DNA of 64,000 nucleotides from Gracilinanus agilis. Lineage: Eukaryota. Every line of letters begins with the position of its first letter. The stretch's first letter is position 1. Below the pieces are notes generated by a model that worked only from the letters and a program-made list of their open reading frames with translations, was not told the DNA's origin and ran no database searches. A program made the position numbers and the translations under genes. Positions 6,021 through 64,000 of this stretch are shown piece by piece. Where the stretch lies: positions 92,022,595 to 92,086,594 of the forward strand of contig NC_058130.1 of assembly GCF_016433145.1 (NCBI RefSeq), written 5' to 3'.

Positions 6021-6124
6021 AAAAAGTAGGCATTCTATTGGGAATTTCCACAAATTTATGCATAGAAGATAATTATTAAATAAATACATAGTAATTGGGG
6101 GATGGCAGAGGGAATTGGGGAAGA

Positions 6125-6331: not shown

Positions 6332-6619
6332 CTAGGGACGATCTTAAACAAGGTGACACTTGGCCCGAGCTGGGGGTTCAAAGAGGAAAAGGTGAGAAAG
6401 GAGAGCCCTTCAGGCCTACAGACATAGGATTTACTCTCCCCAGCCCTCCCCTGTCAAGAATGTAAGCTCCTCAAGGGCAGGGCCTGTATCAGTTTTCATC
6501 TTTCTATCCCTAGGGCTGAGCCTAGCACATGATAGACACTTAATACATGTTTAAAATGAATTATCCTCTGAAGACATCCTTTCTGAAGGCTACACTAAGG
6601 GTGATTGTGTTGTCCTTAA

Positions 6620-7819
<1,200 letters not shown>

Positions 7820-11265: not shown

Positions 11266-11404
11266 ATGGAGAAACTTCCCTCACTCCTTCCCCCCAGGCC
11301 TAGCAGGGGAGCAGGGAGCCTGAGCCATCTGTACTGGATAACCGATACTCCCCATCTCTCAGCCACAAACCAAGCTGGCCACTGCTTCATCCTGCTGCTG
11401 CTAA
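11266..11404 (+). CDS. LAMB2L: LAMB2L coding exon 1 (leader / signal peptide start)
   Basis: agtATGG Kozak; MEKLP...GHCFILLLL; phase-1 donor A|gtaaag at the same position as in LAMB2 exon 1; an alternative start is possible. Confidence 0.55.
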
Positions 11405-14400
11405 GTAAAGAGGATGGGCCGGGAGGAAGTCAGAAGTGGGTGGGTTGTTTGTCCCTTATGTGGGGTGTTGTATTCCCTGGGGGGATGGTCCTTGGAATTT
11501 CTGTTTAGGGCTCTGCCTCCCCTCTGGTCCTCAGTACAGATAAACTATGCCTGTACCCATGAAGTGCCTGACCTTCTGCCCCGACCTGGCTGCTCTGGAG
11601 GAAGCTGTTACCCTCCCACTGGCAATCTAGTTGTAGGCAGGAGCCAGAGTCTCCATGCCTCATCCACCTGTGGTTTGAGTGGGCCTGAGCCCTACTGCAT
11701 TGTTAGCCACTTGCAGGTGTGTATTTTTCTTTGCTAGCAGCCCTTAAGAATGAGGTATGACTCCCAGAGGGAGAAGGACCAAAGTCTTCTAAGAGACCCT
11801 TGAGGATAATGGGTCCAGAACTTTGAGGGTGGAAGAACAGGGGTGAGAAGTTTCCACAGGAGATCCTGGGGAGTTTTCTCTTGGGAGGGGGAGTGAACTT
11901 AGGGGGTTTGATGAAGGGAAACTGTGGACCCTGACCCCCATCTTCTTCTATCCAGGACTCTGAGAAGTGCTTCTTCTGTGACTCAAGGGGCCAGGGAGGC
12001 CATAGAATCAAGAATGTGATCTCCTTAAGTGGACCTGATGGGGAAAGAACATGGTGGCAGGCAGAGAGTGGTGAGGGGATGAGGCATTTCAGGTGGCAGT
12101 GGAAGAAGGAAAGGGGAAAGAAGAGGAAAGGGGTGGGGGAGTCAGGAATGAAAAGCATGTGAGGCAATGGGGTCAAGAGCTGGGCTCTCAGTAGAGTTAT
12201 GGGATAGGTAACAGGGTAGTTCTGACTAGGTCCCTGTTGGTTCAAGGTGTGGAAAATGTCAGTATCCAGCTGGACTTGGAAGGCGAGTTCTACTTTACCC
12301 ACCTTATCATGACCTTCAAGGTACTGAACGTATACCCCTCTAGTTTTAGATGCCATTGTGTTTTTTTCTCATGTGAATCTTGACCCCTATGGATAGGGTG
12401 ACGGGTCTGGAGTCAGAAAAATGGCTTCAGATGCACATTAGCTATGTAACCCTAGGCAAGTCACTTCACCCCTGATTGGCCCAGTTTCCTCAAACTGGAG
12501 ATAATAATGTTTACCTCCCACTGTTGTTATGATGATCAAATGAGATAATAATTGTAAAGCAAATACTTAGCACAATCCTTGGCTCATACATGTTAGCTAT
12601 TATTTCCCATTCCAAGGGTCCTAACCTTGGTGATTCTTTGTCCTGTGCCTCCAAGTCCAGTTACTTCCTAACCTCTGACCCTGTAGTGACTTCCAACCAT
12701 AGAAACACCTTATTCATTCAGCCTGTGCCCCTCACTCTGATACACTTTCCCCCCAGACTTTTCGCCCAGCTGGTCTACTCATTGAGCGTTCAGCAGATGG
12801 AGGTCATTCCTGGCGAGTTTACCGATACTTTGCTCACAACTGCTCTGGCCTCTTCCCTGGGGTACCCCTTACACCTGGCCACAAAGTCAGTGACCTCGTT
12901 TGTGATCAGCGATACTCAAACATTGAACCATCAAGTCAGGGTGAGGTCAGTCCTCTTGTAGAAAGGAAGGATGAGAAATGGGTGGAGGTTGTCAAGGGCT
13001 AGAGTTCAGTGGTCAGAATTTCAGGTCCTATTTCTTGCCCTTATCAGGTAATTTTTAAAGTTCTGGACCCAGCTATTCCTGTGGCAGATCCCTATAGTCC
13101 AGAGATCCAAGGTAAGCGACCTTTCTGATGCCCAGGCCATAAACCTTAGGTACCTCTACCCCTGAGACTCTTCCCCACACCTCTCATACTTTGAGACTCC
13201 CTACCCCCACAGATGCTGAGGCCCAGGGTGAGTGCCCCCTGTAGTTCCTTGTGACCTCCCTTAGAGGAGCATGAATCAAGTCAGAGCCATCTAGTCTGAA
13301 AGAGGTTTCCTTGACAACAACATCATTCCGTAGCTGCTTTCCCTCAATCAATGCTTCCCTCCAGGCATTAGCATTTTACAATGTTTTTGACACAGTATAT
13401 TTTTTTCTTTCTTCCCTAAAGCAAAGGCATCTAATGAAATGATAGAGCAAGCTGAGCATATTTCTTAAAGGGGCCTCATCTTTTCCTTCTCTGAACATCT
13501 TAATTGTTTCTCAGAAAACTATTAACAGCTTCTAAATAAGGGTACATAGTGGTGCCTTCACAGAAAGATTAGGCATGTGGATTCATTGATTTTTAGAACT
13601 GGAGGGGATGGGTTGTTAGAGACTATTTACTCTAAACCCCATAAAGGAGGAAACAGGAATTGAGAGGTAACAGGAATTAGCTTGGAACTAATTAATGGCA
13701 AAGCTGGAAGTCCAGCTTGGATCCAATACCCTTGCCAATGTACCATATTACCTTAGGAATAGATAGTATACAATTCTGGGAATAGCAAGTGACAGGGCTG
13801 GGCTGGTTAGCAAGAATGTGGAGTGATGGGGAAAGAACATGGCGGCAGGCAAAGTGTGGTGAGAAGCTGAGGGGTTAACAAAGGGATTAAGCTGTGCTTG
13901 GAATGATCTATTGGTATGATTCAGTTAGGCCTACCGTAGGAGGAGCCAAGATAAGCATTGTGGGCAAGGAAGAGTGAACAAAGAACGGGAGGCTGGACTG
14001 AGCTGAATGTATTGGGGAGGGGGGGAGGTGGACTTGATTGGAGCATAGGGTAGGAAAGGCCCTGTCAGGTCCCAGCTCTGCCATTTGTTCTATATCCAAT
14101 AACAAGTTATGGTTAAGAGACCAGTCAGGGTTATATGGTCGGATATGTGAGTCAGTATGTCAGAGACAGGACTTGAACTCATGTCTTCTTGGCTTTGAGG
14201 CCAGTTCTCTACTACAACAGGCTGCCTTTCCAGTTACAAAATAGGGATGCTAATATTCATACTCCTTATCTCTGTTTAGATTGTGAATGGTCTTAAATAC
14301 TTGACTAAGGAGTTTGGACCTTATCCTGTTGGTAGTGAAGAGTCATTGAAAATTTCTGAACAAGGGGGTACATAGTCACACCTCTGAATTATTTTGGTAT

Positions 14401-17400
14401 ATGTCTGAAGGATAGGTTGGAGAGAATAGGATAGGAGAGAAAGATGGGTTGGGGAGTCAGAGAGACAGAGAGAAAGATCTGAAGAGACAGAAGGAGAGAG
14501 ACTAGGAGAAACAGAGAAGGGGGGAGAGAGAGACAGACAGAAGCAATAGAGAAGGGGAGGGGGATGAAGGGAGAGAAACTGGAGGCAAGGAGACTAGGAA
14601 GCTATTGAAATAGTCCGTGTTACATAGAATAATAGGTACTTGAACTAAGGTAGCAGAATGAGGAGGTTAGCAAGAGTTGTGGATACAGTATGAACAAGAC
14701 TTGGCGACTGGTTGGATTGACTGGGGGGGGGGGGATGTGAGAGAGAAGAAGACTAAAAGATTGTTCCAAATGATATTTCAAGTCTGAATAAGAAATAAGT
14801 GGGAGGATGGTCATGAGAAAAATCAGGTTTCATGGGAAAGTTGATTACTTAAATATGGGTTATTTTAAGTTTGAAGTGCTGGTGAGATATTGACATGGAG
14901 ATGTCCAGCAGTGGTAGAAGACCAGGAGAATATTCTGTGACAGATACTTCCTTTGCACCCCACAGACCATGATGAGGTGGGGATGTCCAGACTGATGTCT
15001 CCATCCCACCCACCTTCACTACCCCACTTTCCCCAGAGTTGCTTCGAGTTACCAACCTGAGGGTGAATTTCTCCAAACTACACACGTTGGGAGATGGGCC
15101 CCTGGGGGGCTGGGGCCACCGCCATGGGCCTCACTACTACTATGCCTTGTATGAGCTTGTGGTCCGAGGAAGCTGCCTATGCCATGGACATGCCTCTGAA
15201 TGTGCACCTGCTCCTGGTGCCCCACCAAGTGTGGATGGCATGGTGAGTGAAGTCTGAGATCAGGGAGAGTCAGAGATAAAGGAGGAGTTTACTGTGTGTG
15301 GTGGGGGGAGGAGAGTTTCTTCCTGAGGACTGAGTCTCTGGAGTCTCCCTGGGAGTTGGATACCCAGGGTCTTCATGGAATTCAGATTCCTGTTAGTGTG
15401 TCTTAGTGTTTCCAAAGCCTCAACAGCTCTACCATTTATAGGTACATGGGCTTTGTGTGTGTCAGCACCGGACAGCTGGACCCCACTGTGAGCTCTGCCA
15501 GGACCTTCACCATGACCAACCCTGGCACCCAGCTGAGCCTGGGAATCCTCATGCCTGCCAGAGTATGTGTTGCTTGTTGTCTTCCATAATCTATATGCCT
15601 ACTCAGTATTCCCTGAGGATCTCCCAACCCACTAATTTCCCTTTCTTTTTCTCCAGAGTGTGAATGCCACCAGCATGCCAGGAGTTGCCACTTTGACATG
15701 GCTGTTTTTGTGGCCTCAGGCAATGTGAGTGGAGGTGTGTGTGATGCATGTCAGCACCACACAGCTGGGAGGCACTGTGAGATTTGCCGACCCTTCTACC
15801 ACCGGGACCCCCGTGAAGACCCCCGATCCCCAAATACCTGTAAACGTGAGTCCCTTGATGCTGAGTCCTGACTCCAACCATGAACCTGACTCTGATATTT
15901 GACACTCATACCCAGTCCTAACCTCTGGCTCCACCCATAATTTCTGACTATGATATTTGACCCCTTATTCCAAATCTGTTCCTATGTCCCCAGCATGTGA
16001 CTGTGACCCTTCAGGCACCTTGGATGGGGGTCTCTGTGACACACACACAGATGAGGTCCTGGGACTCCTCTCTGGACAGTGTCGTTGCAAAGCCCACGTG
16101 TGGGGCCCACGCTGTGATACCTGTCGTCCTGGTTACTATGGCCTGAGCCCAGCACTGCCTGAAGGTTGTTTATGTGAGTGACCTTGGATTCTCCATGACT
16201 GTGGATCCTAAAACCCTCAACTCAGAATACCTGGTCATGATAGCCTTAGCCTGATGGAGCCCAAAGCTGTCTTTTGACCCTTTACCCTGAGAACTCCAAA
16301 ACATGACCCTAAAAATTTAGGAAGCCCCAACCTCTATATCTCTTATACCCCTAATTACACAACTCAAGACTCTTGGACCCCATGACCCCAAAAACTATCA
16401 ATGCATGACACTCAGTCTCTGGTCTGAGAACAATTTGACCCAAGAGATCCTGTGTGAGTGGCCCCTAGCCCAGGGTTTCATAATGGTTGACCCAGGTTTC
16501 CATAATTTCCTGACTCCCAGAGTCCCAAAACTTGAATACCTAGTCACGACGACTAGCTGGATTTAAAGGCTCTCTGGGAACTCCTTCCCAGTCCAGGTCA
16601 CTATGATTGAGCCTAATTTATTGACTGTCTCTAACCCTCCCCTCCTCAGTTTTTCTCCAGACCATCCTTTCTATAACCTTTTGACACCCTCTTTGCTTCC
16701 TTAGCTTGCAGGTGTGATCCACGGGGCACAGTTCCAGGTGACACCCCCTGTGACCCCATCAGTGGTGACTGCTATTGTAAGCGTTTTGTCACTGGTCAGA
16801 ACTGTCACCAGTGCCTGGTGAGCTCTTACCTTGACCTCAGATTCTTTTTTTTCCGTTCTGATCCTGGTCCTTCCTAAAACCTAATTACCTAATTCCCAAC
16901 CTAGAATCCTGTCTTTGACCTTCAGCACTGAACTCTGAGCCATACTCCTTGTCCACAAGACCCTTAAACCCTTAACCATATGTACTAACTCAACACTGTT
17001 ACATTCACTTTTGTAATAGCTTTTAAAGTTTATTCTCGAAAATTCAACACAAATGAAGCTTTTCTGCTATGTCTCTAAGTCAGTTTACTTCTAAGTGTAA
17101 GCTTTCTTATCTATACAAATGAGAAGGTTGTACCCAGCAATCCCTGTGGGTCCTCTGACATTCTGCATTCATGTTTTTGGGTTCCTTTTAGCTCTGATAT
17201 ATGATGTCTTCTGTTCTTATATTCCTTCCAGATCTGAAATTCTTTATTCTGCACTCTGAGTATCCTTTTAAGCAGATGATTTTTAAGGTTCTATATAAGC
17301 TTCAGTTTTTTTCCCCAAGACACCTTGTCTTCCCAAGTGGCAGTAGGATGCCTTCCTGTGAATTATTATCATACAGAATACAAAATCCACTCAGAGAGGG

Positions 17401-20400
17401 GACTTAGCCAAGGTCACATGGCTAGTTTGTGGAAGAAACAGGTTTACAAACCAGATTTCTTGCTTCCAAATCTAGCATTCTTTCTGCTAAACCACACTGC
17501 TTCTAGGTTAGTTTATTTTCCCAATTACTATTTTAAAAATATTTTCCGTGTAGATCGTTTTATTGGAAAATTTGCTGAAAGATGAACAAGTATTTTAAGG
17601 AAGTGAAATTTAAGGTATCATCAGTACTATTATCACTAATCATCTTTTAATCTAACACTGGATTAACTCAGACCTGATTAGGAGATCTTATCACTTTGAA
17701 TTGGAAGAGATTTGGAGATCACTGAGTCCTACCCCCCTCATTCTATTGATAAGGAAACTGAGGCCCAGAAAGGGTGCATAATTTGGCCTTTGTCACATAA
17801 GGAGATCCAGGATTTGAACCTATGATCTCCCATCTCCAATGGATGCCAATTTTACTCTTTTAAAAATTACTCTGAACACTTACTTTTGAGTCTTACTCGT
17901 GATCTTGAGCACTTGGTTGGGAAAGAACTATGGATTCTCCATGAGTAAACCAAGGGGTTGTTCAAGATAATTTTTAAGGCTCTTCCCTTTGAGAGGCTAA
18001 TTGACATTGGCTGGTTCTAGGAAATCAGTCACTACTCCTAGGCCTGATTCTCTCTGTCTCTATCACAGACAGGGACTGACTAATTAGAAGACTGCTCAAA
18101 GGACCTTATTTATCTCTTGTCTCTGGATCAGCTAGATGGCCTTTCTGCTTCTGCCGATGCCTTGGAGTCTTCTCTCTTCCACCTTGCACAACCAGTGCCA
18201 ATAAGGCATTCTATCTGTTTTTCTCCTGATCATCCCTTACTCTCCCAAAGAACTAGCAGCACTTATCACAACACAGCTTTGTGTCTGTTAGCTTGAGATC
18301 ATGTTTAAAATTACCTATAACAGTTCTCATAGACCTTCAGTCTCATTATTTTTATAGCCTCTTCCAGAGGGACTGGATTTTTGGAGTAATTTGTAGTAGG
18401 TTGGAATAAGTCAGTCTAGTGCTCCCATAGGGGCTGGGAGAGAAACATAGGGAAGAAGCCCACAGCAGTGGCAAGTGATGGTGGCAGGGATGGTGATCTT
18501 TGAACTGCTATAGGATGAAAGTATGCTCTCTGCCATGTGGGCACCATGGGAAAAAGCCCTGGTTGCTTTACTTTACTTATAGCTTTGCATGGAAATAGAC
18601 TTTTTTTTAAAACCCTTACCTTCCGTCTTGGAATCAATACTGTGTACTGGTTCTAAGGCAGAAGAATGGTAAGGGCTAGGCAATGGGGGTCAAGTAACTT
18701 GCCCAGGGTCACACAGCTGAGACGTGTCTGAGGCCAGATTTGAACCTAGGACCTCCTGCCTCTAGGCCTAATTCTCAATCCACTGAGCTACTCAGCTACC
18801 CCCAAAATAGACATTTTTTATTGACAAATTTAGACAGAAAACTTCACAAGATTTTTCTGAATTAGCAACCTCTGAGTATCACCCTCTGATGTCAAAACTG
18901 CTGATCCCTGATCATCTTCAGACTTATAGACCTTGCTCCCTGGCTCCCAGAGAGGAGACAGCATGGTGTATTTGGTGCCAAATTCTTAGGTTTAGAGACA
19001 GGAGGTCCAGTTTTGACTTTGGATGTCCTGTGCAAATCATCTAACTTCCCTGAGCCACAGTGTCCTTGTCTATAAAATGGGGATACTCATAACCGTATTT
19101 TCTACTTGGAGGGGATGTTGTAGGGCTAGTTCTTTGTAAACTTTTAACTCTTTCAGAAATCTCAGTCAAATAATTTATGATTCTTCCCCTCCTTTCTCCC
19201 TGCAGCCAGAATTCTGGGGACTAAGCAATGACTTTACTGGTTGCCGGCCTTGTGATTGTGATTTTGGAGGAGCCTATAGCAACAGGTGGGGACTTGGTCA
19301 ATAGGGTTTGGCCAAGAGCCTATAAGCTAGAGGAAGGGGGGATTATAGGCAGTGCCAGGGCCAGCAATGGTAGATTCACTCTTTCCCTTTCCACTACACG
19401 GGTCACTAGGTGTTCGTCAGGGGAAGGCCTTTGTCCTTGCCGCCCTCACCTACAAGGCCGGAACTGCCTTGAGCTTCAGTCTGGTTACTTCTGTGCAGCC
19501 CTGGACCAAGCCATAGCTGAGGCAGAGCTTGGGCAGAGGCTCAAGCCCTTTGACCCACGGCTACCTGTGAGTATATGAGCTCCAAATGTTGGACCTGAGA
19601 GAGGGAGAGATGGCAGAGGAAAGGATCAATCAGAGAGGGCTTTTTGGATGAGGATCTTGAATAAAAGACAATGAGTTTCTCACCGTAGAAAGTCTCCAGA
19701 TGAATGGCCACCCATCAGGATGTTGTAGAAGTAATTCCTGTTCTTGTATAGACTCCCAGGTGCCGTTGGAAGACTCCACTGGCTTAGAGGTTTTGTGAGG
19801 CTCTGAGCTCAGGAATGGGAGAATTTGAAAAGAGGGTAAAGAGGTGAGGTTGTTGGTATTTTGGAGTAGTAGCTGGACAAAAGAGATAGAAGCAACTCTG
19901 GCAGTGATGTATACAAATAAGAGGAGACCTGGACCTTTAGCCCTGCTATCCTTCAGGGATCCCTTTTCCTTGATGCCACCCCCAACTGCCTGCCAACAAC
20001 AGGACCCATGCTGAAGAGGCTCAGACCCCGACTCCGACGACAACGTAGCATCCCCTGCCCTCTCCCTGTTACTCGTCGTGGACGTCAGAGCCACCAACTA
20101 TCCAAGGTGAATAGTTGATGGGAAAGCTCTGGGGATGAGAGAAGGTTGCAGGACAAGAATGTACTAAGGGAGCTTCCTAGGGTAATAGGAAAAGAAAAAA
20201 CCTAAGCTCTGCTCTTGGGGAGCTCCCAGTCTGTGGGGAGATAAAGCAAAGAGAGCCATATTTTCCCCTTGAGACCTCACAGTTTAGAGGGAGACATGTT
20301 ATTTCTGTCTCATTCCTAGGCTGCTGTGGAGCCTAGGCCTTGGGACAGGGCCCCTCATGCCTCATCCTGGACAGGCTCTGGGTTTGCCAGGATTGAAAAC

Positions 20401-23400
20401 AGGGCTGGTCTCATGCTCCAGGCCCCTCCAGTGCCACGAGCCATGGAATATGATATCGTGCTACGTTATGAAGCTCAGGTCAGGCCCAGGGACTGTTGGG
20501 GTGCTGGAGGAGCTGGGGAAATAGCGAGGGAATCTCTTTGACCCTTGGCCCTTTGACACTTTCAGGCCCCTGAGGACTGGGAGGCCCTTGTCAGTGTACG
20601 AGCCTACTCTCTGCCCAGCAGCACCCGTTGTGCCAATGTGTTGCCCTCAGAGCAGCTCTACCAGGTGGCCCTACCTCCCAGGCATAGGTATGAATTCAGT
20701 CAAGGGGGATCTAGAAAATTTGATGAATGCAAATATGGAAGACACTAAGTATCAAAGAACTGAAAGGGTGAAAATAGACATCAGCCTTGCATTAACATTC
20801 CTTTTCCTCCCTAGAGCTGTGGTTCTGTCTAGACCCTTCTGCTTTGAACCTGGAACCAGATACATGGTGACCTTGAGACTTCAGCGAGTGACAAGTGCAC
20901 GGGGCCTCCCCGGGGGAACCATTCTGCTAGACTCAGTGAGCCTTTTGAGACCCCTGCCTCCCAATATTTTAGGATCTCTAACATTTCTCTTCATTCTACA
21001 AGACTTCCTCTGAGCTCCACTGTTCCCAGTATTGGGTTCAGAGCACAGTTAGCAGTTTTGAGGTCTCCCACACAGAGGTGACAATTGAAGGAAGGCCCTG
21101 TGGGAGCCGGGCTATCAGACAAGGATTTATTTATAGCAAGTATAGACTCACAGATCCAGCGCTGGAAGGGACTTCCAAGGTCATGTAGTCCAACCTTCTC
21201 ATTTTACTGGAAACTGAGGCCCAGTCAGGTTTTTAGTATCAGTGCTGGGATTTCTTCCAAATCCTCTGACTCTTGTATACTTTGTATTCTACTGTGCTGC
21301 CTCTCATTTGGGCCATACAGGACAGCTAGGATTTGAAGATAAGAAGGGAGGTAACATTCTGGATAGGAGATTAAGGAGAGCAGGCAGAAATAAGCTTAGG
21401 ATGGGGCAAGAGAGAGATGCTGGGGAGTTAATACAAGGGCACTGAGTTCCAGGATGGGGAGTTCGGGCTTACCTAAGAGTCAGAGTAAGTCACATAAAAT
21501 TCTTGATCAGTGACAAGGTCTGACTTGTGCTTTGGATATCTGTTTTGATGAATCTGAGAATAGAGTGACTGTAGGCAGGGAGGCCAGTTAGGAGGCTTTT
21601 GTAATTATCCAGAAAGAGGCAGGGAGGACCTAGACTAGAATGATGGCTTCCCTGCATTTTGAGAAGAAGGGATGAATAGGAAAGTACTTTTCAGCCCTGG
21701 GCTTATTGATAAAAAGGCAGACATCTCTCTCTGAGCCTTCCCTGCAGACCTAGATACTTGTCTGTAGCTGTCAATCACTCTTCAGACCTATTGAAGAAAC
21801 AGTGAGAAATCCGAGAAGATGCTAAGAATATGTACATAGAATGAGCATATTTGTAAAGTGGAGAATTACAGTTGGAATGAGTGACTGGCGTTTATGACAG
21901 TGTCTTGGGGAGCCCCTGATTTGTATGTGGCTGTGAAATAGGAAAAATAAGTCTGTGAGTGGGAGATGAGAAAGGGGAAATGAGGTGAGAGTGAGCCAGA
22001 GGAAAGGAGAGGAGTCAATCTGAGTTAAGACTGGGCTTTTTAGCTGGGTCTTCATAGCAGAGAGTTGGCTTCTGTTCTAAATCCTAAATCTTACCTTTCA
22101 TATTGAGCAATGGCAGTATTGAGGAGTTGGGATGAGATGGCTTATCAGTTTTTATGTCAGAATGATATGTTTCTGAGCTCCCCTGTAGTCTCTGCAAAGG
22201 AAGAAAGGGAGCCCTTGAACCCTTGAGTCACAGGTTGATGGCTTGCCATTGAAAAGAACCTTAAGGTTAAGACTTAGGAAAAACTGATTGGTTGTGGGGG
22301 ATGATGGAGAATGATGAATCAGTAAGTACTCCGAGCGTTTGAGTTTAGATGAAAAAAGCCAGGGTGATTCCCTCAACTGAAATAGGGAGGCTGGGTGGAA
22401 GAGCAGGTTTGGGTTGGAAAATGACCAGTTCACTTTTGAACAAATTGAGTTTAAGGTCAAAGACACATCTAGGTGGAGAATCAATTTAATTCTTAAGTTA
22501 CCAAGTACCTACTACATGCAAAGCTTTCTACTTTGCACTGGGTATACAAGGAGTAAAAAGAAAGGAGAGGGGACAGGTAAGTGGCTTAGTGGATAGAAAG
22601 CCACACCTAAAGATGGAAGATCCTGTGATTCAGCTGTGAACTGTTGGACACTATTTAGCTATCTGACCCTGGGCAAGTCACAACCCCAGTTGCTTAAATC
22701 CTTAGTGTTCTTCTGCCTTGGAACCAATCCTTAGTATTGATGATTCTGAGATAGAAGGTAAGGGTGAAGAAGAAGAAAAGAGTACTGGGGAGATTCAGCA
22801 TATGCTTAAATAAATATAAGTCTAGGGAAAATGTAAAACAGATCAAAGCAAGATCCAAATAAAATTCTCCAGAAAATTGGATGAGGGAGAGATTGCTTTA
22901 AATTGTTAAATTGAAGGTAGTAAGTACATTTGAATTTGAAGTACCTAGACTGGAGATTCAAAGAAGAAAGGGCCAGGATGAAGACAGATGTTCTAGGAAT
23001 ATGTGGATTCATGGACATGAGAAGGGAGGTGGAGATTGAGGAGCCACTAGTGATTGGTCCAGTTTGGCTGGAATATAGAGTCCAAGTCTGAAAGTAGAAA
23101 TATGGGAATCATCTGCATAGAAGGGAGAATAGAAGCCATGGGTGTGGATGAGTCAAGAAATAAAAAAAAAAAAAATGCTGAGGCTAGTGCATCTTCCCAA
23201 GTCTCTTGGGATTCTTAGATTTCCTGTGACCCACCTGAAAGCCACCAGGCTCTTTCTCATTTCTCAGAGAGGCCTTCTGTCTTTAATCTAGAATGCTAGG
23301 ATCAAGGTCTGGCCAGTTGCCCTGTTCCCATGAATAGACAAACACTGTTCTCATAGACTACTCTTTTCCTAATGATCCCTTTTTCTCCATAGCTGGTACT

Positions 23401-26400
23401 CCTACCTCGAGTAGAGGAGCTTCCAGGCCTGAGAAGAGGGGACCCTGGGGCATCAGGGCGCCTGAGAGAACTCAGTCAAACTCAGTGCCTTGAGGCTGCA
23501 AGAACACCTCCATTTGGGCCCCCATCAGAATCTTGTGCCCGCTTGGTCTGTAGCATCTCTGCTTTACTATATGGTGGTGGCTTGGGTAAGTGACTCCGAG
23601 TGATTGAGACTGGAGAATGTTGGGTAAAGGGTCCTCAGGATTAGGGTGGCTCATGGGGTTGGGAGAGTAGCAATGGAGTCAATAAAGAAAGTGAGAGAAT
23701 GGATAAGGAATGCTTGGAGGAGATGAGAATAATAATAGCTAGCCTTTTTATTATGGTTTATATGGTATTTCATTTGGTCCTATCAACACTATATTAGGTA
23801 CTATTTTTATCCCCATTTTTAGTTATGGAAACTGAGGCAGAGAGGGAGGGTAAGTGACTCACTCAGGGTTACACAGCTAGGAAGTGTCTGAAATGGGATT
23901 TGAACTCAAGTCTTTCTGATTCCAAGGCCAGCCCTCTGTCCACTGAGCCATTTTCCTGCCTTAGAGATGCCAAGGAATTGACTGGGTCCTGACTAAAGGG
24001 ACCAGGGTAGTGACAGTGGGAGTCATCAGGTTGTTTCTGGAGCAAAACAAAAACATAACTGTAAAAGTGACCTTATGCATAGGGAGATAGGGTAAGAGAA
24101 ATTAGGGGGTTGAGGAAAGGACCAAAGAATGACTATGGTCACAGAAGAATGAAAAGATGACTAGGGAAATGAATGGAAGTATCTTTTATTAGGGCTAGAT
24201 CCAAAGATTGTTTCTGCCTCACCCAGACATTACCTTCCCACCTCTAGCCTGTGAATGCGACCCACAAGGTTCTCTGAGCTCTGAGTGTGCCCGTGTGGGT
24301 GGCCAGTGCCCATGCCGACCCCATGTCATTGGCCAGCGCTGTGACCAGTGTGAGCTCCAGACATATGGCTTTGGCCCAGCAGGTTGCAGTGGTAAGGCCT
24401 GAGATATTAGGCTAAGCACTGGTTGGGCATGGAGATGGAATTGGGGCAGACTCCCCTCTCTCACCCAGCCTGACCCTTCACTGTTTCCTTTAGAATGTCG
24501 TTGCTCTCCTGAGGGGTCCACCAGTTTGGCTTGTGATCCTATAAGTGGACAGTGCTTATGCAAGCCAGGCATCACAGGACGAAGGTGTGACCAATGCCTG
24601 CCTGGCCAATGGGGCTTCCCTCAGTGCCAGCCATGTGAATGTAATGGGCATGCAGAGCAGTGCCACCCCCACACAGGTGTATGCCACGCCTGTGGGGATG
24701 CCACCACTGGGCGTCACTGTGAAAGGTGAGTAAAGCCCCATCTTAAAATCTTATTTAAACAAGAAGGTAGAGCTCTCACCCCCAGGAAACCTTTAGGCCT
24801 TGCTGGGCAATGTTGAGAGTGGAGATAGGTGGCACACAGCCTGGTTATTAGCACCACGATCTATTCCCACAGGTGCCAGGATGGTTATTATGGAGACCCT
24901 GTCCTGGGCTCAGGACAGCAGTGCCGACCTTGTCCCTGCCCTGGGTTCCTAGGCTCTGGTAACTACCATGGGACCTCTTGTCAGGCGGATGGTAGTGGTG
25001 AACGAATTCTGTGTGTCTGTGCTCCTGGTTATGCAGGTAAGTGGTAACTGTGGGCATTAAAGGTACAGAACCAGTATCCAAACATATAAGCAACTCCCCC
25101 CCCAATAATATTAATTTCTATTTCTATGGCAGCTTTGGGTTTACAAAGCACTTTCCCTATAACAACCCTGGAAGTATTTTTTCTCCATTTTATTGATGGG
25201 GAAATTGAGGATTAGAGAAAGAAAATTACTTGCCCCAGGTAACATAACTAGTAAGTGCCAGATCTCTGGATTCCAAAGATGTACTTTTCCCACTACATCA
25301 TGCTGATTCTTTTCACAGTTGCTCCTATCCATGCACAGACCATGCACCTGTTGTCCTAGACCTGAACCATTTCACAAAGACAAAACTATAATGAAATACA
25401 AAAAACTGTCTTTTCTTTGGTAATTTGTCATAACTATTTTGATAATAATGTTGATGTTGGTGGCTATAGTGATGATGGTGATGCTGATAATAGCAACTCC
25501 TTCTAGCCTTTTTTTTTTAACCCTTCCCTTCAATCTTAGAATCAATACTAAGTATTTGTTCCAAGGCAGAAGAGCAGCAAGGGCTAGGCAATGGGGGTTA
25601 AGTGACTTGCCCAGGGTCATACAGCTAGGAAGTATCTAAGGTCATATTTGAACCCAGGACCTTTCAGGCTTCAGGCTTGGCTCTATCCACTGATCCACCT
25701 CACTGGCCCTTCCCAACAGCTTTAGTTTGCATGGAACAGTTCTTGCCATAATCCTCTATATACTAGGTAGCACAAGTGTTCTGTTATTGTTTCCAGTTTA
25801 TAAAATGAGGAAACCAAAACGTGGCAATAGGAAATGATTGAAGATGACAGATTTAGAGCTAAAAGAGGAGACCTTAAAGATTAACTAGTCCAAGCCCTTT
25901 ATTTTTACAGAAGGGTAAATGGAGGCCCAGGAAAAGGGAAGTGACTTGTTCACATAAATTATACAGGGCAAGAAAAATAGCTTACATTTATACAGCACTT
26001 AGAGGTTTTTTATATCATTAAGACTTTTCAAAAGTTTTATTATTGAATTTTGTTTTTATATCCTAAGGATTTTCAGATACACTCTCCTTTTTTCTCCTCC
26101 TTCCACAGTAAGCTATCTCTTGTGTCAAAGGGAAAAACAGGGGGCAGCTGGGTAGCTCAGTGGATTGAGAGCCAGGCCTGGAGATGGGAAGTCCTAAGTT
26201 CAAATCTGGCCTCAGACACTTCCCAGCTGTGTGTCCCTGGGCAAATCACTTGACCCCCATTGCCTACCCTTACCACTCTTCTGTCTTGGAGCCAATACAC
26301 AGTATTGACTCCAAGATGGAAGGTAAGGGTTTTAAAAAAAAAAAAAAAAGGGAAAAACAGTTAAAATTCTTCATCACATTATCTACATCTGATAGTATAT

Positions 26401-29400
26401 GCAAGACTGTAAACCCCTTTGTCCCATGAAAGGAGAGAAGTGAAGTCCTTTTCTGGGTCTTGAATTATACAGTGTTTTCAGTTTTATCTTACTTTTCTTT
26501 TCATTTATGGTATAATAGTCATGATTCGTATTGCTTTCCTGATTCTGATTATTTTTCCAAGCATTAGCATCATACAACTCTCTTCTTTTTTTTTTTTAAT
26601 TCCCCATATTGTTTTTCCAGGGTGATAGTATATTCCATTATATTTACCTACAACAGCGTGTTTGACTATTCTTTTCTCTGTGGGTGTCCATTTAGTTGCT
26701 ACTGTTAATATTTTTATAACTAGAGAGACTTTCTTTTTGTCATTCTTTTCAATGGAATGTGTGCTCTGTAGTGGAATCATTGGGTTGGAGGATAGGGATA
26801 GTTGAGTCACTTTTTTCATATAATTCTAGTTTGTTTTCCAACATGGATAGACTATCTCACATCCCCATCAACAGTGTTATTATACCTGACTTCTCAGAGC
26901 CCCTCCAGTGTTGATTATATCCATCTTTGCCATAAAGTGGGAACCTTAGAATTTTCATTTTCATTTTTCTTTTTATTAGTTATCTGGAGCTATCTTCCAC
27001 ACTCATATATTAATAGAACTAATAGATTGTGATTCTTCCCTTGGCCACTTATTTCTTGGGGACATTTGAAGATTTACAGAATGTTACCCCCCCCAACCCC
27101 CGACTGCTGTGAGAGGAGTACAAGAACTGGTATCTCATCTTTTTTGTCATAGCATCAAGATGGTTGCCCACAGTCACACAGAGCTCAGACTTCTGCCAGA
27201 TCTACTTAAGCTCTGGACAGGAGTTGATGAAATGGGTTTTTCCATTCTCTGCAGGTCCTCGCTGTGACCGCTGCTCTGCTGGCTATTTTGGGCGTCCTTG
27301 GCCAGAGGGAGTAGTAGGGGGGTCACTGTGCCGACCCTGCCAGTGCAACAACAACATCGATCCTAGTGATCCCATGGCCTGTGACCCCCATAGTGGGCAC
27401 TGTCAGCGCTGTTTACACCACACCCATGGGCCACACTGTTCACACTGCCAGCCTGGCTACTTTGGCAATGCCCTCCGACCACGAGGCTGCCGGCGTGAGT
27501 AGAGTTGATCTGGAGGGAGGCTCTTAGAGAGATGATGGGTGTCTTCCACCCCACCATCTCTGCCTGTGCCCTTCTGTCCCTGCCCCAGCTTTGACCTCCT
27601 TAGCCAAAGCTGAGTTCCTCTTTTAAGTCTTGACATTTCCCATTTCTTTTTACCCACTAGGCTGTAGCTGTGACCTACAAGGCACAGTGCCTTCCCGGTG
27701 CCTGCCTGGAAGTGGCATCTGCTTCTGTGATAGGCTCAGTGGGCACTGCCCCTGCCGCCCACATGTCCTAGGACGGCTCTGCGACCACTGCGCTCCCCAG
27801 TTCTGGAACCTGGGAGGGCCCCGGGGTTGTGAGCCCTGCACTTGTCATGCCCAGCACTCCCTGCAGCTCACCTGTCATCCAGTAAGGGAATACTTCAGGC
27901 TTGTCCATATATATGCACACATGCTCGAGTGGATGTTTGCATGTGACTGCCTGTCTGGGAGGCAGTGACTGTGTCTGTGGATGTGTTTGAGTGCTTGCCT
28001 GCATGGATGTGTGATTGGGTGGGTCCATGCTTGTATGTTCAACTATCTGTCTGCCTGCAGCTGTGTATATGGGTGACTGAGCAAGAGGGCCTGGGGAGAG
28101 GGAGGACACTGGGATGGCTGGGAGGACACAGGGGAGCAGTAGAGGTTTGAGAAGTCATGGCCAGATCATGGAGTACCTCAAATGTTAGAATATGGAGTTT
28201 GGACCAATAGTCCTAAAATCACAGCCAGCAAGACGTCCTGCATGTGTGGCAGTGAAAGTTGTGGGCATTTTGTCAGCATGGTGTAGTGTCAAGAATACAT
28301 GGTCTCTGGGGCTGCCAGGTGATTTAGTGGATGGAGTGCCAGACTTGATACTTAGTGTCAATTCTAAGACAGAAGGTAAGAGTTTAAAATAAAAGAATAC
28401 ATGAACTCCTGGGAATCAGGAGATTTGGTTTTAAATTTGGGCTTATTAACTCTGTGACCTAGTGTCTAGTGCCACCTGGGGAGCCATTATTTAAAGCTTG
28501 TTGAGCTTAGGCCTTAGTTTCTTCATATGTAAAAAAGATAATAATACTTGAACTTTCTGTGAATTAGAGTTTTAGTGGGACCCAGGATGTTGTTGTCAAG
28601 TTGTTCAGTTGTACCTGATTCCCTGTGACCCATTTGGGGGTTTTCTTGGCAAAGATAGTAGAGTGGTTTGCCATTTTCTTCTCTAGTTTTACATTCATTT
28701 TACAGATGAAGAAACTTTGACAGACTTGCCCAAAGTCACATAGCTAATAGATTTCTGAAGCCGTATTTGAACTCAGGAAGGTGAGTCTTCCTGACCCTAG
28801 GCCTGGCACTCTACTCACTGCACCATCTCACTGCCCTAGAACCTGGAATAAGAACTCTGAGCCCGAGTCCTGGCTCTGGCACTAGCCAGGTGTGTGATAG
28901 TAGACAAGTTACTTCTAGGCTATGTGGCACAGTGGAGATGAGCCCTGGATCCAGAGTCAGATGATCTAGGTCCCAACCCTTGCTTTGCTGAGTAGTACTT
29001 GTAGAACCAGGGGACTTCCCCTTTCTGGGCCTCTGTTTCCTTTTCTGTAAAATAAAGAGATTGTAATAGATAGTCTCAGGTTCTTTCTGTCCTCAAGTAG
29101 TTTCCATTCTACTTTAGTCACAGCTACCCTCTAAGATGAGCTATGCAAAAAAATTAAGCAGCATCCCCCCCCTTTCATAAAAAGAGCTAGAAGGACTTTA
29201 AGAGATAATTTAGGTTCATCCCCCTTCATCTTGCTGCTGAGGAATATTAAGACCCAGAGAAATGTGAGGACTGATTCACAATATTTCAGCCAGTGTGTGG
29301 AGGAGCCACAGTATGCTCCCAGGTGCCCCTCTGGGAGGATGAATGAACTCACTCATTCACAGCATGATATTGTGGACCAGATTGTGCCAGGCAGTAATGA

Positions 29401-32400
29401 TGACAGGGGAGGGGGAGTTCATAGAGAGAGAAATTTAGACCAAATGTCAGGGAAAATTTTCTTAATGAATGATGAAAACAGTCTCAGAATGGAATGGGCT
29501 GAATTCTCCATCATCACAGAAGTCTTCTACAGAAACTGGCTGCTAGCTTGTCAGATATGCTGTATGTATATTGAGGCCACTAGGTGGCACCATAGTGCAC
29601 AGAGCATCAGACCTGGGGTTGGGAGGACCCAAGACCAAATCCAGGCTCAGACACATAATTGGCTGTGTGACCCTAAGCAAGACACTCCATCCTGTTTGCC
29701 GTGGTTTCCTTTTGTAAAATGGGAGTAATAATAGCACCTACCTCCTAGGGTTGTTGTGAGTATCAAAAGGAAGTTAAAGTGCTTAGCACAGTGCCTGGCA
29801 CATAGTAATTAATTGCTATTTAAATGAATGTATAGATGATGTGTTTTATTTTAATAAAAATACTTTATTTTTGCCTATTATATGTAATAACAAATTTCCA
29901 CATAAGTTTTATGAAGTTAACATAAGTTTTATGAAGTTACATAATCCAAATCTTCTCCTCCCCGTCCCTGCGAGCTGGCACAATCAAAACAATTCGATCT
30001 GGGTTATACATCTTTTATCATGCAAANNNNNNNNNNNNNNNNNNNNNNNNNNNNNNNNNNNNNNNNNNNNNNNNNNNNNNNNNNNNNNNNNNNNNNNNNN
30101 NNNNNNNNNNNNNNNNNNNNNNNNNNNNNNNNNNNNNNNNNNNNNNNNNNNNNNNNNNNNAGATTCTTTGAAGGGCATAGGTGGGTTGGACTGCTAAAGG
30201 TCCTTTTTGTCTCTCAAATTCTGAGATGCTGGGATCATAGGCTCATAAGGGTTAGATCAAGAAAGGGCCTTAGCTTTTATATTATTGAATCTTCTAATTT
30301 TATAGAGAAGGGCCCTGAGTCCCAGAGAGGAGAAGTGATTTACATGGTTTGTATCAAAGCCAGGATCTGAATTAAGGAAAGTCTGGTTTAGGAGTGAGGA
30401 GACCCAAACATGTTTGTAGGCAGAGATAAAGGAGCCAGGGAAAGATTGAAGGTATATGAGAGTGAGTGAGGAGATCATCTATGACCTAAGAGATTGGTGG
30501 TGAACCTTTTAGAGACTGAGTACCCAAACTGTAACCCTCATGCAATATGTGAGCCTTTCTCCCACCCTACCTCCAGATGGGGAAGTGAGGAAATGCTTCC
30601 ATTGGGCTGCTGGGCAGAGGCTTGGGTGATGGGAGAAATGTCCTCAGGCTTGCATGTGGAGAGGGGGAGGGGAGCAGCCCCATCTGGCACACAAGCCATA
30701 GGTTTGCCAACATGGGCCTAAGGCCTTGGAGGAGATGGTGGGTAGAGATGAACTGAATTGTGAAGAAAGAGAGTAGCTTGGGGAAGGATCAGCCTTGGTC
30801 AGGAGAAGGGAGTTATAGGGAATAATCAAAAGACTGGATGAGAACTTTTGTGTATGTAGACTATGTCTCTGTCCTTCTAGGAGTCCTTGGTGAAGGGTTT
30901 CTTATAACTTGGACTGGGCTTTCCATTGGTCTCCTATCTCCACAGGTCACTGGTCAATGCCCATGCCAGGAAGGATTTGGAGGACGTACCTGCTCACAGT
31001 GCCAAGAAGGGTACTGGGGGGACCCAGAGAAGGAGTGCAGAGGTGAGGAGCAGTGTCTGCAGAGGGTGAGCTAAGGGTGAGAGGGACATTGGGGAGGCAG
31101 CTTGGTATGGTGGATAGAGTCTGGTTTTAGCAATAAAGGCCCTGGGTTTGAATCCCATTCTTGCTGTTTACTAGCTGTTGGCCTTGGACAACTCTCTTCT
31201 GAGTCTTTTATCTCATCTATAAAATAAAGAGGTTAGAGACTAGGTAGATCTGTAAGGACCTTCCGTCCTATAGTCCTAAGAAAAGCAAAGTATATGGGAG
31301 AAGGGTTGGATGAATTCAGGGACCAGGAAAATCAGTTACCCTTGCTGATCCCAACTTCTTTGTTTTTTCCCAGCCTGTGCCTGTGACCCTCAGGGCTCAG
31401 TCTCTCTGCATTGCCACCCTAGGACAGGGGTCTGCTCATGTCTCAATGGTATCTCAGGCCCTCAGTGCAAGGCCTGTGCCCGGGGTTCTCGGGGCAGTTT
31501 CCCCCACTGCCGGCCCTGCCCTACCTGCTTCTCTCACTGGGATAGCCGACTAGGTCTCCTCCAACAGCGGTTGGCCACATTGGCTCAGGGGAGGGATGCC
31601 CTGAGTGAGGCAGCCACTGACCGGAGCAGTGGGGGGCGGTTACTGTCCCTGGAGGCTGCCCTGGGACAGGTCCAAGGAATCTTGGTGTCCACCTACCCAC
31701 TGGTGGGGCCCTTGCAGCAGCTTTCAAAACAGCGGGATGGACTCAGGCAAGACAGCAACCTCAGTGGCTTGGAGAAGGACAGGGAGGGTCCAATTGGGGA
31801 ATTGGGTCCAGTCTATAGAGGCCATATCTTGAAGTCAAGTGTTCAACTTTGGCAACTTTTGGCAACTTCTGATGCCAAGGTTAGTCTGTCAGAGTCAAGA
31901 ATTAATCTTCATCCTTGAATGACTGTCCATTTTCTCTTTAGGAGGGAGGTATCCATGCTGAGTCGAGCACTTCGAGGGGTGGAGCGAAGTATGGCTATGA
32001 GTGGTCCCTGGGCTAGAGCTCAGCACGCCCGAATAGGCCAGCTGACACAAGAAATGGAACATCTTAATCACTTGGCCACCCAGCTCAGGGAGGCCCCTCG
32101 GGGAGCTCAGGGTATGGCCCAGAGGGAGGCTGGAGACACTTGTGGGGAGACTGTTGGTGAAGAAGCTGGTCCTCACATGCTGACCTGTTTCCCCAGATGC
32201 TGCTTCCCTGGTCTCCAAGGCTGTTCTCATCTCCCAGAAGTCCGAGTTTGGTATCATAGTCATGACTGCCCTGACAGACACAGAGAGTGCCCTGAGCCAA
32301 TCCCGTAATGTCCGGCACAGAACAGAGGGGCTGCTGCAAGAAATGAAGCCTCCCAGCAGAGCAGCTGTCTGGGGGGAGCAGCTCCAGGCACTTGTGAATG

Positions 32401-43752: not shown

Positions 43753-64000
<20,248 letters not shown>

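What the first reader, a model, noticed from the sequence alone, without database searches (positions are those of the whole stretch)
19957..20106. Extra cassette-type exon inserts a Cys-bracketed polybasic furin-site loop between LE5 and LF
Seen: a 150-nt exon missed by the ORF track, with good splice sites (ccctgctatccttcag| and AAG|gtgaat), phase 0-0 and an open frame: [50 protein letters not shown]. All 7 CpGs occupy positions 1-2 of Arg codons, while the flanking introns are nearly CpG-free, which points to selection on the arginines. The matching LAMB2 intron is only 95 bp (49417-49511), so LAMB2 cannot hold this exon. Known: R-X-R-R (RLRR, 20029-20040) is the furin consensus, and RRQR and RRGR fit the minimal R-X-X-R; LN-LE fragments such as netrin-4 bind and disrupt laminin polymers. 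Inference: convertase cleavage could release, or leave disulfide-tethered, an LN-LE1-5 piece with a basic heparin-binding tail. Skipping the exon keeps the frame and would give an uncleavable isoform, a possible splice-controlled basement-membrane switch.
Basis: partly seen in the sequence, partly recalled or inferred. Interest (0 to 1): 0.85.

Follow-up and report, generated by a model that had tools for sequence, protein, structure and literature searches.

The report
Conserved arginine-rich exon in laminin beta2-like
The 150-base stretch is a genuine coding exon of the opossum's laminin beta-2-like gene, already in public annotation and conserved from fish to marsupials, and it adds a strongly positively charged loop of untested function to one globular domain of this basement-membrane protein.

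Summary

It is a real exon, not a chance ORF.
- It is already part of RefSeq XP_044532768.1 of Gracilinanus agilis, the window's source.
- An orthologous 147-153 nt exon with AG/GT is present in devil, another marsupial, platypus, bat, artiodactyl and pheasant DNA.
- The peptide is in LAMB2L/lamb2l proteins from teleosts to mammals, including cDNA-like contigs.
- In-frame dN/dS among marsupials is 0.35-0.53.
- The neighbouring LAMB2 lacks it.

- The insert is not between LE5 and LF. It lies in the beta1-beta2 loop inside LF, beside the Ca2+ site. Cleavage would therefore nick LF rather than free an LN-LE1-5 piece.
- The second Cys is found only in therians.
- Exact exon-skipping isoforms are annotated in seven bird species, but in none of the marsupial isoforms listed.

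Arginines at P6, P4 and P1 of R-x-R-R-Q-R|S, and a second R-R-x-R-Q motif, are conserved. They fit furin-type sites and heparin-binding motifs equally well.

Best reading: an exposed polycationic LF loop for polyanion binding or retention, possibly nicked by a convertase. The function is untested.

The parts
11299..41208 (+). LAMB2L (laminin beta-2-like) gene of Gracilinanus agilis. All coding exons are colinear with the 1836-aa Monodelphis LAMB2L, with no stop inside any aligned exon.
   Evidence: tblastn of P0094 against the window. The first-stage note s1-153767 says the same.
19409..19566 (+). Upstream exon: end of LE5 (..SGYF), the LAMB2L-specific Cys (TGT 19492-19494), LF strand beta1 with the Ca2+-ligand motif EAE, ending ..DPRLP.
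19567..19956 (+). Intron A, 390 nt, CpG o/e 0.11. 74% identical to the L001 marsupial contig, with 83 gap columns.
19957..20106 (+). The exon: 150 nt, phase 0-0, 50 residues, 9 Arg + 2 Lys against 1 Asp (net +10). It is residues 588-637 of RefSeq XP_044532768.1.
   Evidence: Orthologous exons.
19987..19989 (+). First Cys of the insert, invariant in all 78 distinct insert sequences aligned.
20023..20049 (+). Basic motif 1, R-P-R-L-R-R-Q-R-S. The Arg at P6, P4 and P1 (counting from R|S) are 94%, 88% and 94% conserved and are never Lys. They are kept as CGN codons with wobble changes in 7 species.
20056..20058 (+). Second Cys (TGC), present in all marsupials and eutherians sampled. It aligns with CGC (Arg) in platypus and pheasant.
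20071..20088 (+). Basic motif 2, T-R-R-G-R-Q (R-R-x-R-Q), conserved from teleosts to mammals.
20107..20319 (+). Intron B, 213 nt, no CpG.
20320..20478 (+). Downstream exon: LF strand beta2 region with the WTGSGF Ca2+-site motif. Matches Pfam LAMININ_IV_B profile positions 18-66.
49417..49511 (+). The 95-nt intron of the tandem paralogue LAMB2 at the matching exon junction. It has no room for the exon, and LAMB2 also lacks the GYF-Cys.

Best explanation
Shown: 19957-20106 is a genuine coding exon (about the 14th) of an intact LAMB2L gene. LAMB2L is a laminin beta chain that lies in tandem upstream of LAMB2. The exon is old, present at least since the bony-vertebrate ancestor, and is already in RefSeq models. 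It is specific to the LAMB2L/lamb2l paralogue.

Structural inference: the exon lengthens the beta1-beta2 loop of the LF (laminin IV type B) beta-sandwich by about 50 residues, between the residues that hold the LF calcium ion. The result is an exposed, arginine-rich (net +10) excursion. It is predicted to be a two-helix hairpin with the polybasic run at its tip in fish, and to be disordered in the opossum.

Inferred mechanism: the loop gives the beta short arm a polycationic site that binds polyanions such as heparan sulfate or heparin and tunes matrix retention. The site can be left out by exon skipping, at least in birds.

Also inferred: the conserved R-x-R-R-Q-R|S may in addition be nicked by furin-type convertases in the secretory pathway. 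If so, the nick would open the loop while the two halves stay together through the LF sheet and the LE5-LF-LE6 packing. It would not shed an LN-LE1-5 fragment.
For: Exon reality and age:
- An identical peptide is in XP_044532768.1 of G. agilis.
- A separate 147-153 nt phase 0-0 exon with conserved AG|G and AAG|gt is found in devil, a second marsupial contig, platypus, bat, artiodactyl and pheasant DNA.
- Between marsupials the exon shows one in-frame 3-nt indel, against 126 gap columns in the two flanking introns.
- dN/dS is 0.35-0.53 in frame, against 0.8-2.9 in the other two frames.
- Arg CGN codons are kept with synonymous wobble changes.
- The insert is in 223 of 255 LAMB2L-type proteins with a recognisable loop, from teleosts, sturgeon, gar, coelacanth, lungfish, caecilian, reptiles, birds, monotremes, marsupials, bats, artiodactyls and afrotherians.
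- Logan contigs of about 6 kb carrying an uninterrupted ORF of 1831-1864 aa include it. These are spliced mRNA.

Position in the fold:
- In the phmmer alignment to 5LF2, query 6-60 pairs with chain 4-58 and query 136-368 with chain 76-314. That puts 75 residues where beta2 has 17.
- The crystal paper places the Ca2+ ligands E573/E575 and 598/601 on either side of this point.
- Pfam LAMININ_IV_B is contiguous (1-210) in the chicken skip isoform and interrupted in the inclusion isoforms.
- The Danio model (pLDDT 81) matches 5LF2 with TM 0.86-0.89. The insert forms helices 86-97 and 102-119.
- In the opossum model the insert has pLDDT below 50.

Motifs and context:
- RX[KR]R occurs in 79% of 179 distinct loops, against 25% of shuffles.
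- XBBXBX occurs 1.32 times per loop, against 0.18 in shuffles.
- Skip and inclusion isoform pairs exist in seven bird species.
- Heparin binding of beta short arms is known to differ between chains and to matter for the glomerular basement membrane (PMC8026196).
Against: - No binding, cleavage or expression data exist for this loop. The heparin-binding reading rests on charge and motif pattern only.
- Strict Arg, never Lys, at three positions, together with the conserved Gln and Ser around them, looks more like a specific recognition site (protease or partner) than generic charge.
- In fish and lizards the second half (..RAALRRIRQLQQ..) is almost invariant and predicted helical. This hints at a specific protein contact.
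- The skip isoforms are Gnomon models whose read support I could not inspect, and none is listed for marsupials.
- Skipping would leave the LAMB2L-specific Cys after GYF without its most likely partner.
- The motif counts are not phylogenetically independent.
- The opossum structure model is poor overall (mean pLDDT 60).
Confidence: 0.6

Rival explanations
1. The loop is primarily a furin/proprotein-convertase site. Cleavage after RLRR or RRQR releases an LN-LE1-5 fragment with a basic tail that acts like netrin-4 on laminin polymers, or in therians leaves it disulfide-tethered. Exon skipping gives an uncleavable isoform.
For: - R-x-R-R-Q-R|S has Arg at P1, P4 and P6 at 88-94%, never Lys, with Ser at P1' in 79%.
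- At least one RX[KR]R is present in 79% of loops and an RXXR in 100%.
- The loop is predicted exposed, or in fish the motif sits at a hairpin tip.
- The protein is secretory: a signal-like hydrophobic stretch is present.
- Therians acquired a Cys four residues after the putative P1. With the first Cys it would bracket the site.
- Skip isoforms exist in birds.
- There is a laminin precedent: the alpha2 LG domain is furin-processed (reference 61 in PMC6744579).
Against: - The insert lies after LF strand beta1 and between the Ca2+ ligands. LE5 packs on LF helix alpha3 and on LE6, burying about 1600 A2. A cut would therefore not free LN-LE1-5.
- The second Cys is absent outside therians. With it, the region has an odd number of Cys.
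- P2 is a conserved Gln and P2' is often Pro, which is not the classical consensus.
- Some species weaken the site: artiodactyl RLWRQR, and woodpecker and macaw RPQHQR.
- No cleavage data exist.
- My estimate: some convertase cleavage in vivo about 0.35-0.4; release of a free fragment about 0.05.
Confidence: 0.2
2. The insert is a specific protein-protein interaction module: a helical hairpin that docks a defined partner, or packs back on LF or the neighbouring short arm. It is neither a generic polyanion binder nor a protease site. In mammals it is a decaying remnant.
For: - The segment ..QQxRAALRRIRQLQQ.. is nearly invariant across teleosts, amphibian-like and lizard sequences.
- Two helices are predicted at moderate confidence in the Danio model.
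- In therians the helices are broken by prolines.
- dN/dS rises to 0.35-0.53 in marsupials and 0.78 between eutherians.
Against: - pLDDT of the helices is only 57-70.
- No homologue of the insert exists in Pfam or the PDB.
- The arginines, not the helix, are what survives in birds and mammals.
Confidence: 0.15
3. Chance pseudo-exon or annotation artefact. An open AG...GT stretch in an intron that gene predictors copy from species to species, perhaps derived from a repeat, and not part of the mature mRNA.
For: 31 comparable open AG...GT segments occur in this window. Several Ensembl/UniProt and a few NCBI models omit it.
Against: - The frame, the splice sites and a length divisible by three are conserved from pheasant to opossum.
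- Peptide homology reaches teleosts.
- dN/dS is frame-specific.
- cDNA-like contigs with a full ORF include it.
- No other copy of the segment is found among the window's repeat families.
Confidence: 0.02

Closest known systems
Laminin beta2 LE5-LF-LE6 (PDB 5LF2; Pulido et al. 2017, PMC5338690)
   Same: Same domain arrangement and fold. The Danio LAMB2L model matches it with TM 0.86-0.89. The EAE and WTGxGF Ca2+-site motifs, the LF disulfide cysteines and the GYF packing pair are all present.
   Different: LAMB2L carries about 58 extra residues in the beta1-beta2 loop, 50 of them from this exon. It also has two extra cysteines, one right after GYF and one in the insert, that beta2 lacks.
Furin processing of the laminin alpha2 LG region (Smirnov et al. 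2002, cited in PMC6744579)
   Same: A laminin chain with a polybasic site in a surface loop of a globular domain. From general knowledge, the fragments remain associated after cleavage, which is what the LF topology predicts here.
   Different: That site is in the alpha chain's LG domains at the long-arm end and is shown experimentally. Here the site is in a beta-chain short-arm LF domain and cleavage is untested.
Alternatively spliced basic retention or heparin-binding exons of secreted proteins (VEGF-A exons 6/7, PDGF-A exon 6, agrin y insert); from general knowledge, not tested here
   Same: A short, phase-compatible, Arg/Lys-rich exon that can be included or skipped. It would add polyanion binding, and it carries convertase-type motifs.
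   Different: Those are C-terminal tails or small inserts with demonstrated binding. This one is an internal loop of a beta-sandwich domain, binding is not demonstrated, and skipping is seen only in annotated bird and a few eutherian models.
Netrin-4 and LaNt proteins (free LN-LE fragments that modulate laminin networks; PMC9788559; netrin-4 4WNX appears)
   Different: Those are separate gene products or splice products. The LF topology here argues against release of such a piece by a cut in this loop.

Membership tests
Laminin beta chain, LAMB2L/lamb2l paralogue | Beta-chain domain order LN, LE1-5, LF (Pfam LAMININ_IV_B), LE6-13, coiled coil | tested here: met
   Precomputed Pfam families of P0004 and its orthologues. 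LAMININ_IV_B E=1.7e-40. Colinear with the 1836-aa Monodelphis LAMB2L.
Laminin beta chain, LAMB2L/lamb2l paralogue | Tandem position next to LAMB2 | tested here: met
   LAMB2L at 11299-41208 and LAMB2 from 44263 onward, on the same strand. Teleost lamb2l and lamb2 are also neighbours (PMC9504374).
Laminin beta chain, LAMB2L/lamb2l paralogue | Insert plus extra Cys after GYF, shared by orthologues and absent from LAMB2 | tested here: met
   Both Cys columns are invariant in 35 LAMB2L sequences. The window's LAMB2 has GYFL and a 95-nt intron. LAMB1 and LAMB4 were not examined directly, only through the Pfam consensus.
Genuine coding exon | Frame, length class and splice sites conserved in orthologous DNA | tested here: met
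   Seven species, 147-153 nt, AG|G and AAG/AGG|gt.
Genuine coding exon | Purifying selection in the proposed frame only | tested here: met
   omega 0.35-0.53 in frame against 0.8-2.9 out of frame among marsupials. Not met between artiodactyl and bat (0.78).
Genuine coding exon | Presence in mature mRNA of this species | not testable with these tools
   Only the RefSeq model is available. mRNA-like contigs exist for fish and an amphibian-like species.
Cassette (alternatively skipped) exon | Skipping preserves the reading frame | tested here: met
   150 nt, phase 0-0. The skip form restores a contiguous LF profile.
Cassette (alternatively skipped) exon | Inclusion and skip transcripts in the same species | tested here: inconclusive
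   Annotated pairs in Gallus, Lagopus, Phasianus, Accipiter, Falco, Cuculus and Rissa. All listed marsupial isoforms include it. Read support was not inspected.
Furin / proprotein-convertase substrate | R-X-[K/R]-R or R-X-X-R motif with Arg at P1 and P4 | tested here: met
   RLRR, RRQR and RRGR in the window. P1, P4 and P6 Arg are 88-94% conserved. 79% of loops carry RX[KR]R.
Furin / proprotein-convertase substrate | Site exposed in a secretory protein | tested here: met
   Predicted disordered in opossum, hairpin tip in Danio. Signal-like N-terminus. These are predictions only.
Furin / proprotein-convertase substrate | Demonstrated cleavage | not testable with these tools
   No data were found in the literature searched.
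Heparin-binding (Cardin-Weintraub) site | XBBXBX / clustered basic residues | tested here: met
   LKRLRP, LRRQRS and TRRGRQ in the window. 1.32 motifs per loop against 0.18 in shuffles.
Heparin-binding (Cardin-Weintraub) site | Measured heparin or heparan sulfate binding | not testable with these tools
   None available.
Disulfide-bracketed loop | Two conserved Cys flanking the basic motif | tested here: inconclusive
   Both Cys are present in 13 of 13 therians. The second is absent in monotremes, sauropsids and fish. The pairing is unknown. The first Cys may instead pair with the Cys after GYF.

The most novel reading that the evidence does not exclude
The LAMB2L LF-loop exon is a conserved regulatory switch that has gone unnoticed because the gene is dead in humans and so unstudied in the usual mammalian models. 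In this reading it is an alternatively spliced, convertase-processed polybasic hairpin that controls heparan-sulfate binding or network behaviour of a fifth vertebrate laminin beta chain. It would be the first convertase-processed beta short arm, with a therian-specific disulfide tether.
Probability: 0.25. Interest if true: 0.7.

Novelty: new member of a known kind. Interest (0 to 1): 0.42.

Why it matters
LAMB2L is a full-length laminin beta chain kept by most vertebrates. From general knowledge it is reduced to a pseudogene (LAMB2P1) in humans, so it has hardly been studied. The papers found mention lamb2l only in gene lists.

Its one clear structural departure from beta1 and beta2 is this exon-encoded, arginine-rich loop in the LF domain, a domain whose function is still unknown (PMC5338690). 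The loop has three relevant properties. Specific arginines are conserved over more than 400 million years. It can be skipped in bird gene models. It fits both convertase and heparin-binding motifs. Together these give a concrete, testable handle on what LF domains and this extra beta chain do, in zebrafish, chicken or opossum.

The existence of the exon itself is not news, because gene predictors already include it.

Tried and rejected
- Chance ORF: comparable open AG...GT segments are common (31 in the window), so the ORF alone proves nothing. Conservation settled the question.
- Repeat or transposon origin: the all-against-all comparison of open stretches in the window found the SINE-like families but nothing overlapping 19957-20106.
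- Known domain or solved homologue of the insert: none in Pfam or the PDB.
- The profile search of 1.84 billion representatives gave only four hits: this species' own protein, a beluga fragment, and two multi-stretch hits that are probably low-complexity (P0005, P0007) and that I did not retrieve or follow up. The 50% clustering hides the orthologues. The region-restricted searches with full-length ids found them.
- Pseudogene in this species: rejected. All exons are intact, although the RefSeq model is truncated.
- Orthologous DNA for Monodelphis, wallaby and chicken could not be fetched. The files were too large or the isoform was not on record.
- Disulfide pairing: the structure tool returns no coordinates, and the opossum model is poor, so the Cys partners remain open.
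- The search of earlier findings gave no content beyond a first-reader note that the gene is intact.
- Literature: no paper in the searched library describes the insert. Older subscription papers on chick beta chains were not searchable.
Full report
**1. The observation**

It is 50 open codons, preceded by ...ccctgctatccttcag and followed by gtgaat. In that frame the stop-free stretch runs only from 19921 to 20115.

All seven CpGs are the first two bases of CGN arginine codons. CpG observed/expected is 0.61 in the segment. The upstream intron (390 nt) has 0.11, the downstream intron (213 nt) has 0, and the flanking laminin exons have 0.23-0.29. The LAMB2 intron at the matching junction is 49417-49511, 95 nt.

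On its own the pattern is not remarkable. The + strand of this window holds 31 open segments of at least 150 nt, phase 0-0, flanked by AG and GT with decent splice sites, some of them real exons. The question therefore had to be settled with other genomes.

**2. What it is**

A search with the ORF that contains the upstream exon found three useful hits:
- a Logan contig from another marsupial (L001);
- a metagenome contig of host DNA carrying a ruminant-type SINE (L002);
- a bat RefSeq fragment whose C-terminus continues from ..ADPRLP into a homologue of the candidate peptide.

Both contigs carry the orthologous segment as an open, AG/GT-flanked exon of 147 nt.

Between the window and L001 the exon differs by one in-frame 3-nt deletion. 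The two flanking introns carry 126 gap columns. dN/dS is 0.35 in the proposed frame, against 2.9 and 0.8 in the other two frames. It is 0.09 across the basic core.

A profile of the four peptides, run against 1.84 billion representative proteins, returned XP_044532768.1, 'laminin subunit beta-2-like [Gracilinanus agilis]'. Its residues 588-637 are identical to the window's exon. So the window comes from the agile gracile opossum, and public annotation already contains the exon.

Region-restricted searches with full-length proteins then showed the insert widely. It occurs in:
- marsupials: devil, dunnart, monito del monte, bilby, wallaby, glider, possum, wombat, Monodelphis;
- bats, artiodactyls and afrotherians;
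- both monotremes;
- turtles, lizards and many birds;
- a caecilian, a lungfish, the coelacanth, a sturgeon, a gar and about a hundred teleosts, including a Danio species.

Of 255 proteins with a recognisable loop, 223 carry the long form.

Several Logan contigs of about 6 kb hold an uninterrupted 1831-1864-aa ORF that includes the insert. They can only be spliced mRNA.

Genomic loci of devil, platypus, horseshoe bat and pheasant show it as a separate 147-153 nt exon. It is phase 0-0, with AG|G and AAG|gt conserved, and its CpG content stands above that of the upstream intron in every species.

The opossum gene itself is intact. All exons of the 1836-aa Monodelphis protein align colinearly at 11299-41208, and stops fall only in introns. 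The RefSeq model is shorter (1498 aa) and partly mis-spliced.

**3. Where it sits**

The crystal structure of mouse beta2 LE5-LF-LE6 (5LF2; PMC5338690) shows otherwise.
- The LF beta-sandwich begins directly after the GYF pair of LE5.
- A Ca2+ ion is held by Glu573 and Glu575 (the EAE motif, which lies before the insert), by the carbonyls of 598 and 601 (the WTGxGF region, which lies after it), and by Asp719.

In the sequence alignment to 5LF2, 75 residues of LAMB2L stand where beta2 has 17. Pfam's LAMININ_IV_B profile is matched contiguously (1-210) by a chicken isoform that skips the exon. In the inclusion isoforms of chicken and opossum the match starts only after the insert, at profile positions 24 and 13. 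The exon therefore extends the beta1-beta2 loop inside LF.

AlphaFold2 gives the following:
- With 72 orthologues, the Danio segment has mean pLDDT 81 and TM 0.86-0.89 to 5LF2.
- In that model the insert forms two helices (86-97 and 102-119, pLDDT 57-70).
- The RRHRRH run sits at the turn between them.
- In the opossum model the insert is below pLDDT 50, and the model as a whole is weak.

LE5 packs on LF helix alpha3 and on LE6, and strand beta1 is part of the sheet. A cut in this loop should therefore leave the two halves associated. Shedding of a netrin-4-like LN-LE1-5 fragment is unlikely.

**4. What is conserved in it**

In 78 distinct insert sequences, these are conserved:
- the first residue (Gly) and the first Cys are invariant;
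- in the motif R-x-R-[R/H]-Q-R-S, the arginines at P6, P4 and P1 (counting from R|S) are 94, 88 and 94% conserved and are never lysine;
- Gln at P2 is 81% and Ser at P1' is 79% conserved;
- a second motif, R-R-x-R-Q, is conserved from teleosts to mammals.

In seven species these arginines are CGN codons that differ at the wobble base.

The second Cys is present in all 13 therians examined. It aligns with Arg (CGC) in platypus and pheasant, the signature of a CpG transition fixed in the therian stem. The 'Cys bracket' is thus a therian feature.

LAMB2L has another paralogue-specific Cys immediately after GYF (19492-19494), which LAMB2 lacks. In non-therians it is the obvious partner for the insert Cys. 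In therians the count becomes odd, and the pairing is open.

RX[KR]R occurs in 79% of 179 distinct loops, against 25% of composition-matched shuffles. The Cardin-Weintraub pattern XBBXBX occurs 1.32 times per loop, against 0.18. The window's exon has three such patterns: LKRLRP, LRRQRS and TRRGRQ. These counts are descriptive, because the sequences are related to each other.

**5. Splicing**

Exact skip isoforms (..LP|PDVE..) are annotated alongside inclusion isoforms in Gallus, Lagopus, Phasianus, Accipiter, Falco, Cuculus and Rissa. Skip-only models exist for Amia, Polypterus, hippopotamus and three bats.

All listed marsupial isoforms include the exon. The wallaby also uses a downstream donor that adds 16 residues.

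I could not inspect read support. Ensembl-derived models with ragged junctions are not evidence of skipping.

**6. Mechanism**

Shown:
- the exon is real, ancient and paralogue-specific;
- specific arginines are under selection.

Inferred from structure and predictions:
- the exon encodes an exposed basic loop in LF.

Inferred, committing to one reading:
- The loop provides polyanion binding (heparan sulfate or heparin) and matrix retention for this beta short arm.
- This property can be removed by splicing in some lineages.
- Convertase nicking is a plausible additional layer, with probability about 0.35-0.4.
- The heparin behaviour of beta short arms is already known to differ between beta1 and beta2 and to matter in the glomerular basement membrane (PMC8026196).

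Between artiodactyl and bat the exon evolves near neutrality (omega 0.78). Artiodactyl models have also lost the WTG motif. This points to decay of the gene in some eutherians.

**7. Comparison and novelty**

The fold and domain order are those of laminin beta2 LE5-LF-LE6. The difference is the loop and two extra cysteines. Functionally the nearest analogies are two. One is furin processing of the laminin alpha2 LG region. The other is the alternatively spliced basic retention exons of VEGF-A and PDGF-A, cited from general knowledge.

No paper in the searchable library describes the insert. lamb2l appears only in gene lists and in one family survey (PMC9504374).

The exon itself is already annotated. 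Its conservation pattern, its true position in LF and the therian Cys gain appear undescribed in the literature searched. I rate it a new member of a known kind, of moderate interest.

Noticed in passing
window 11299-41208, especially 30922-31373 and 33143-34403: RefSeq model XP_044532768.1 (1498 aa) has an odd N-terminus. It also has a frame-shifted-looking stretch where the window encodes normal LE repeats, and it stops after the exon at 33143-33280. Yet the window holds every exon of an 1836-aa LAMB2L up to 41208.
   Followed up: partly
window 30027-30160: A run of 134 N lies in the intron between the exons ending at 27884 and starting at 30922. It was left as it is.
   Followed up: no
window 19492-19494: A Cys directly after the GYF pair of LE5 is invariant in 35 LAMB2L sequences from fish to mammals. 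It is absent from the window's LAMB2 (GYFL) and from mouse beta2. It is a likely disulfide partner of the insert's first Cys, and exon skipping would leave it unpaired.
   Followed up: partly
window 6686-6901 (+): An open exon-like segment whose translation (..[30 protein letters not shown]..) resembles, from memory, the N-terminus of CCDC71. That is the gene next to LAMB2P1/LAMB2 in humans, which would mean conserved synteny.
   Followed up: no
window about 5800-6350, 18590-18800, 25400-26350, 35900-37070, 49700-49940, 55520-55770, 57250-57690, 62250-63030: Many copies, in both orientations, of a short interspersed repeat family lie in the introns of both laminin genes. None overlaps the exon.
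   Followed up: no
P0009/P0090 (wallaby), P0012 (Molossus): An alternative donor downstream of the exon adds 16 residues in wallaby isoforms and 7 in a Molossus model. In the opossum window the read-through hits a stop after three codons.
   Followed up: no
P0015, P0108, P0109 (artiodactyls); L002/L005: Artiodactyl LAMB2L models keep the exon but have lost the WTGxGF Ca2+-site motif (..LGRGSDF..). The exon evolves at omega 0.78 between artiodactyl and bat. The gene seems to be decaying in some eutherians.
   Followed up: partly
P0056 (Megalops cyprinoides): A second tarpon lamb2l-like protein has the insert but lacks the first polybasic run, and its second motif is altered (..RCINH..). It is a natural variant lacking the first polybasic run and with an altered second motif.
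   Followed up: no
window 19630-20097 (-): A 155-codon antisense ORF overlaps the exon. There is no evidence that it is anything but a by-product of the sense-strand composition.
   Followed up: no
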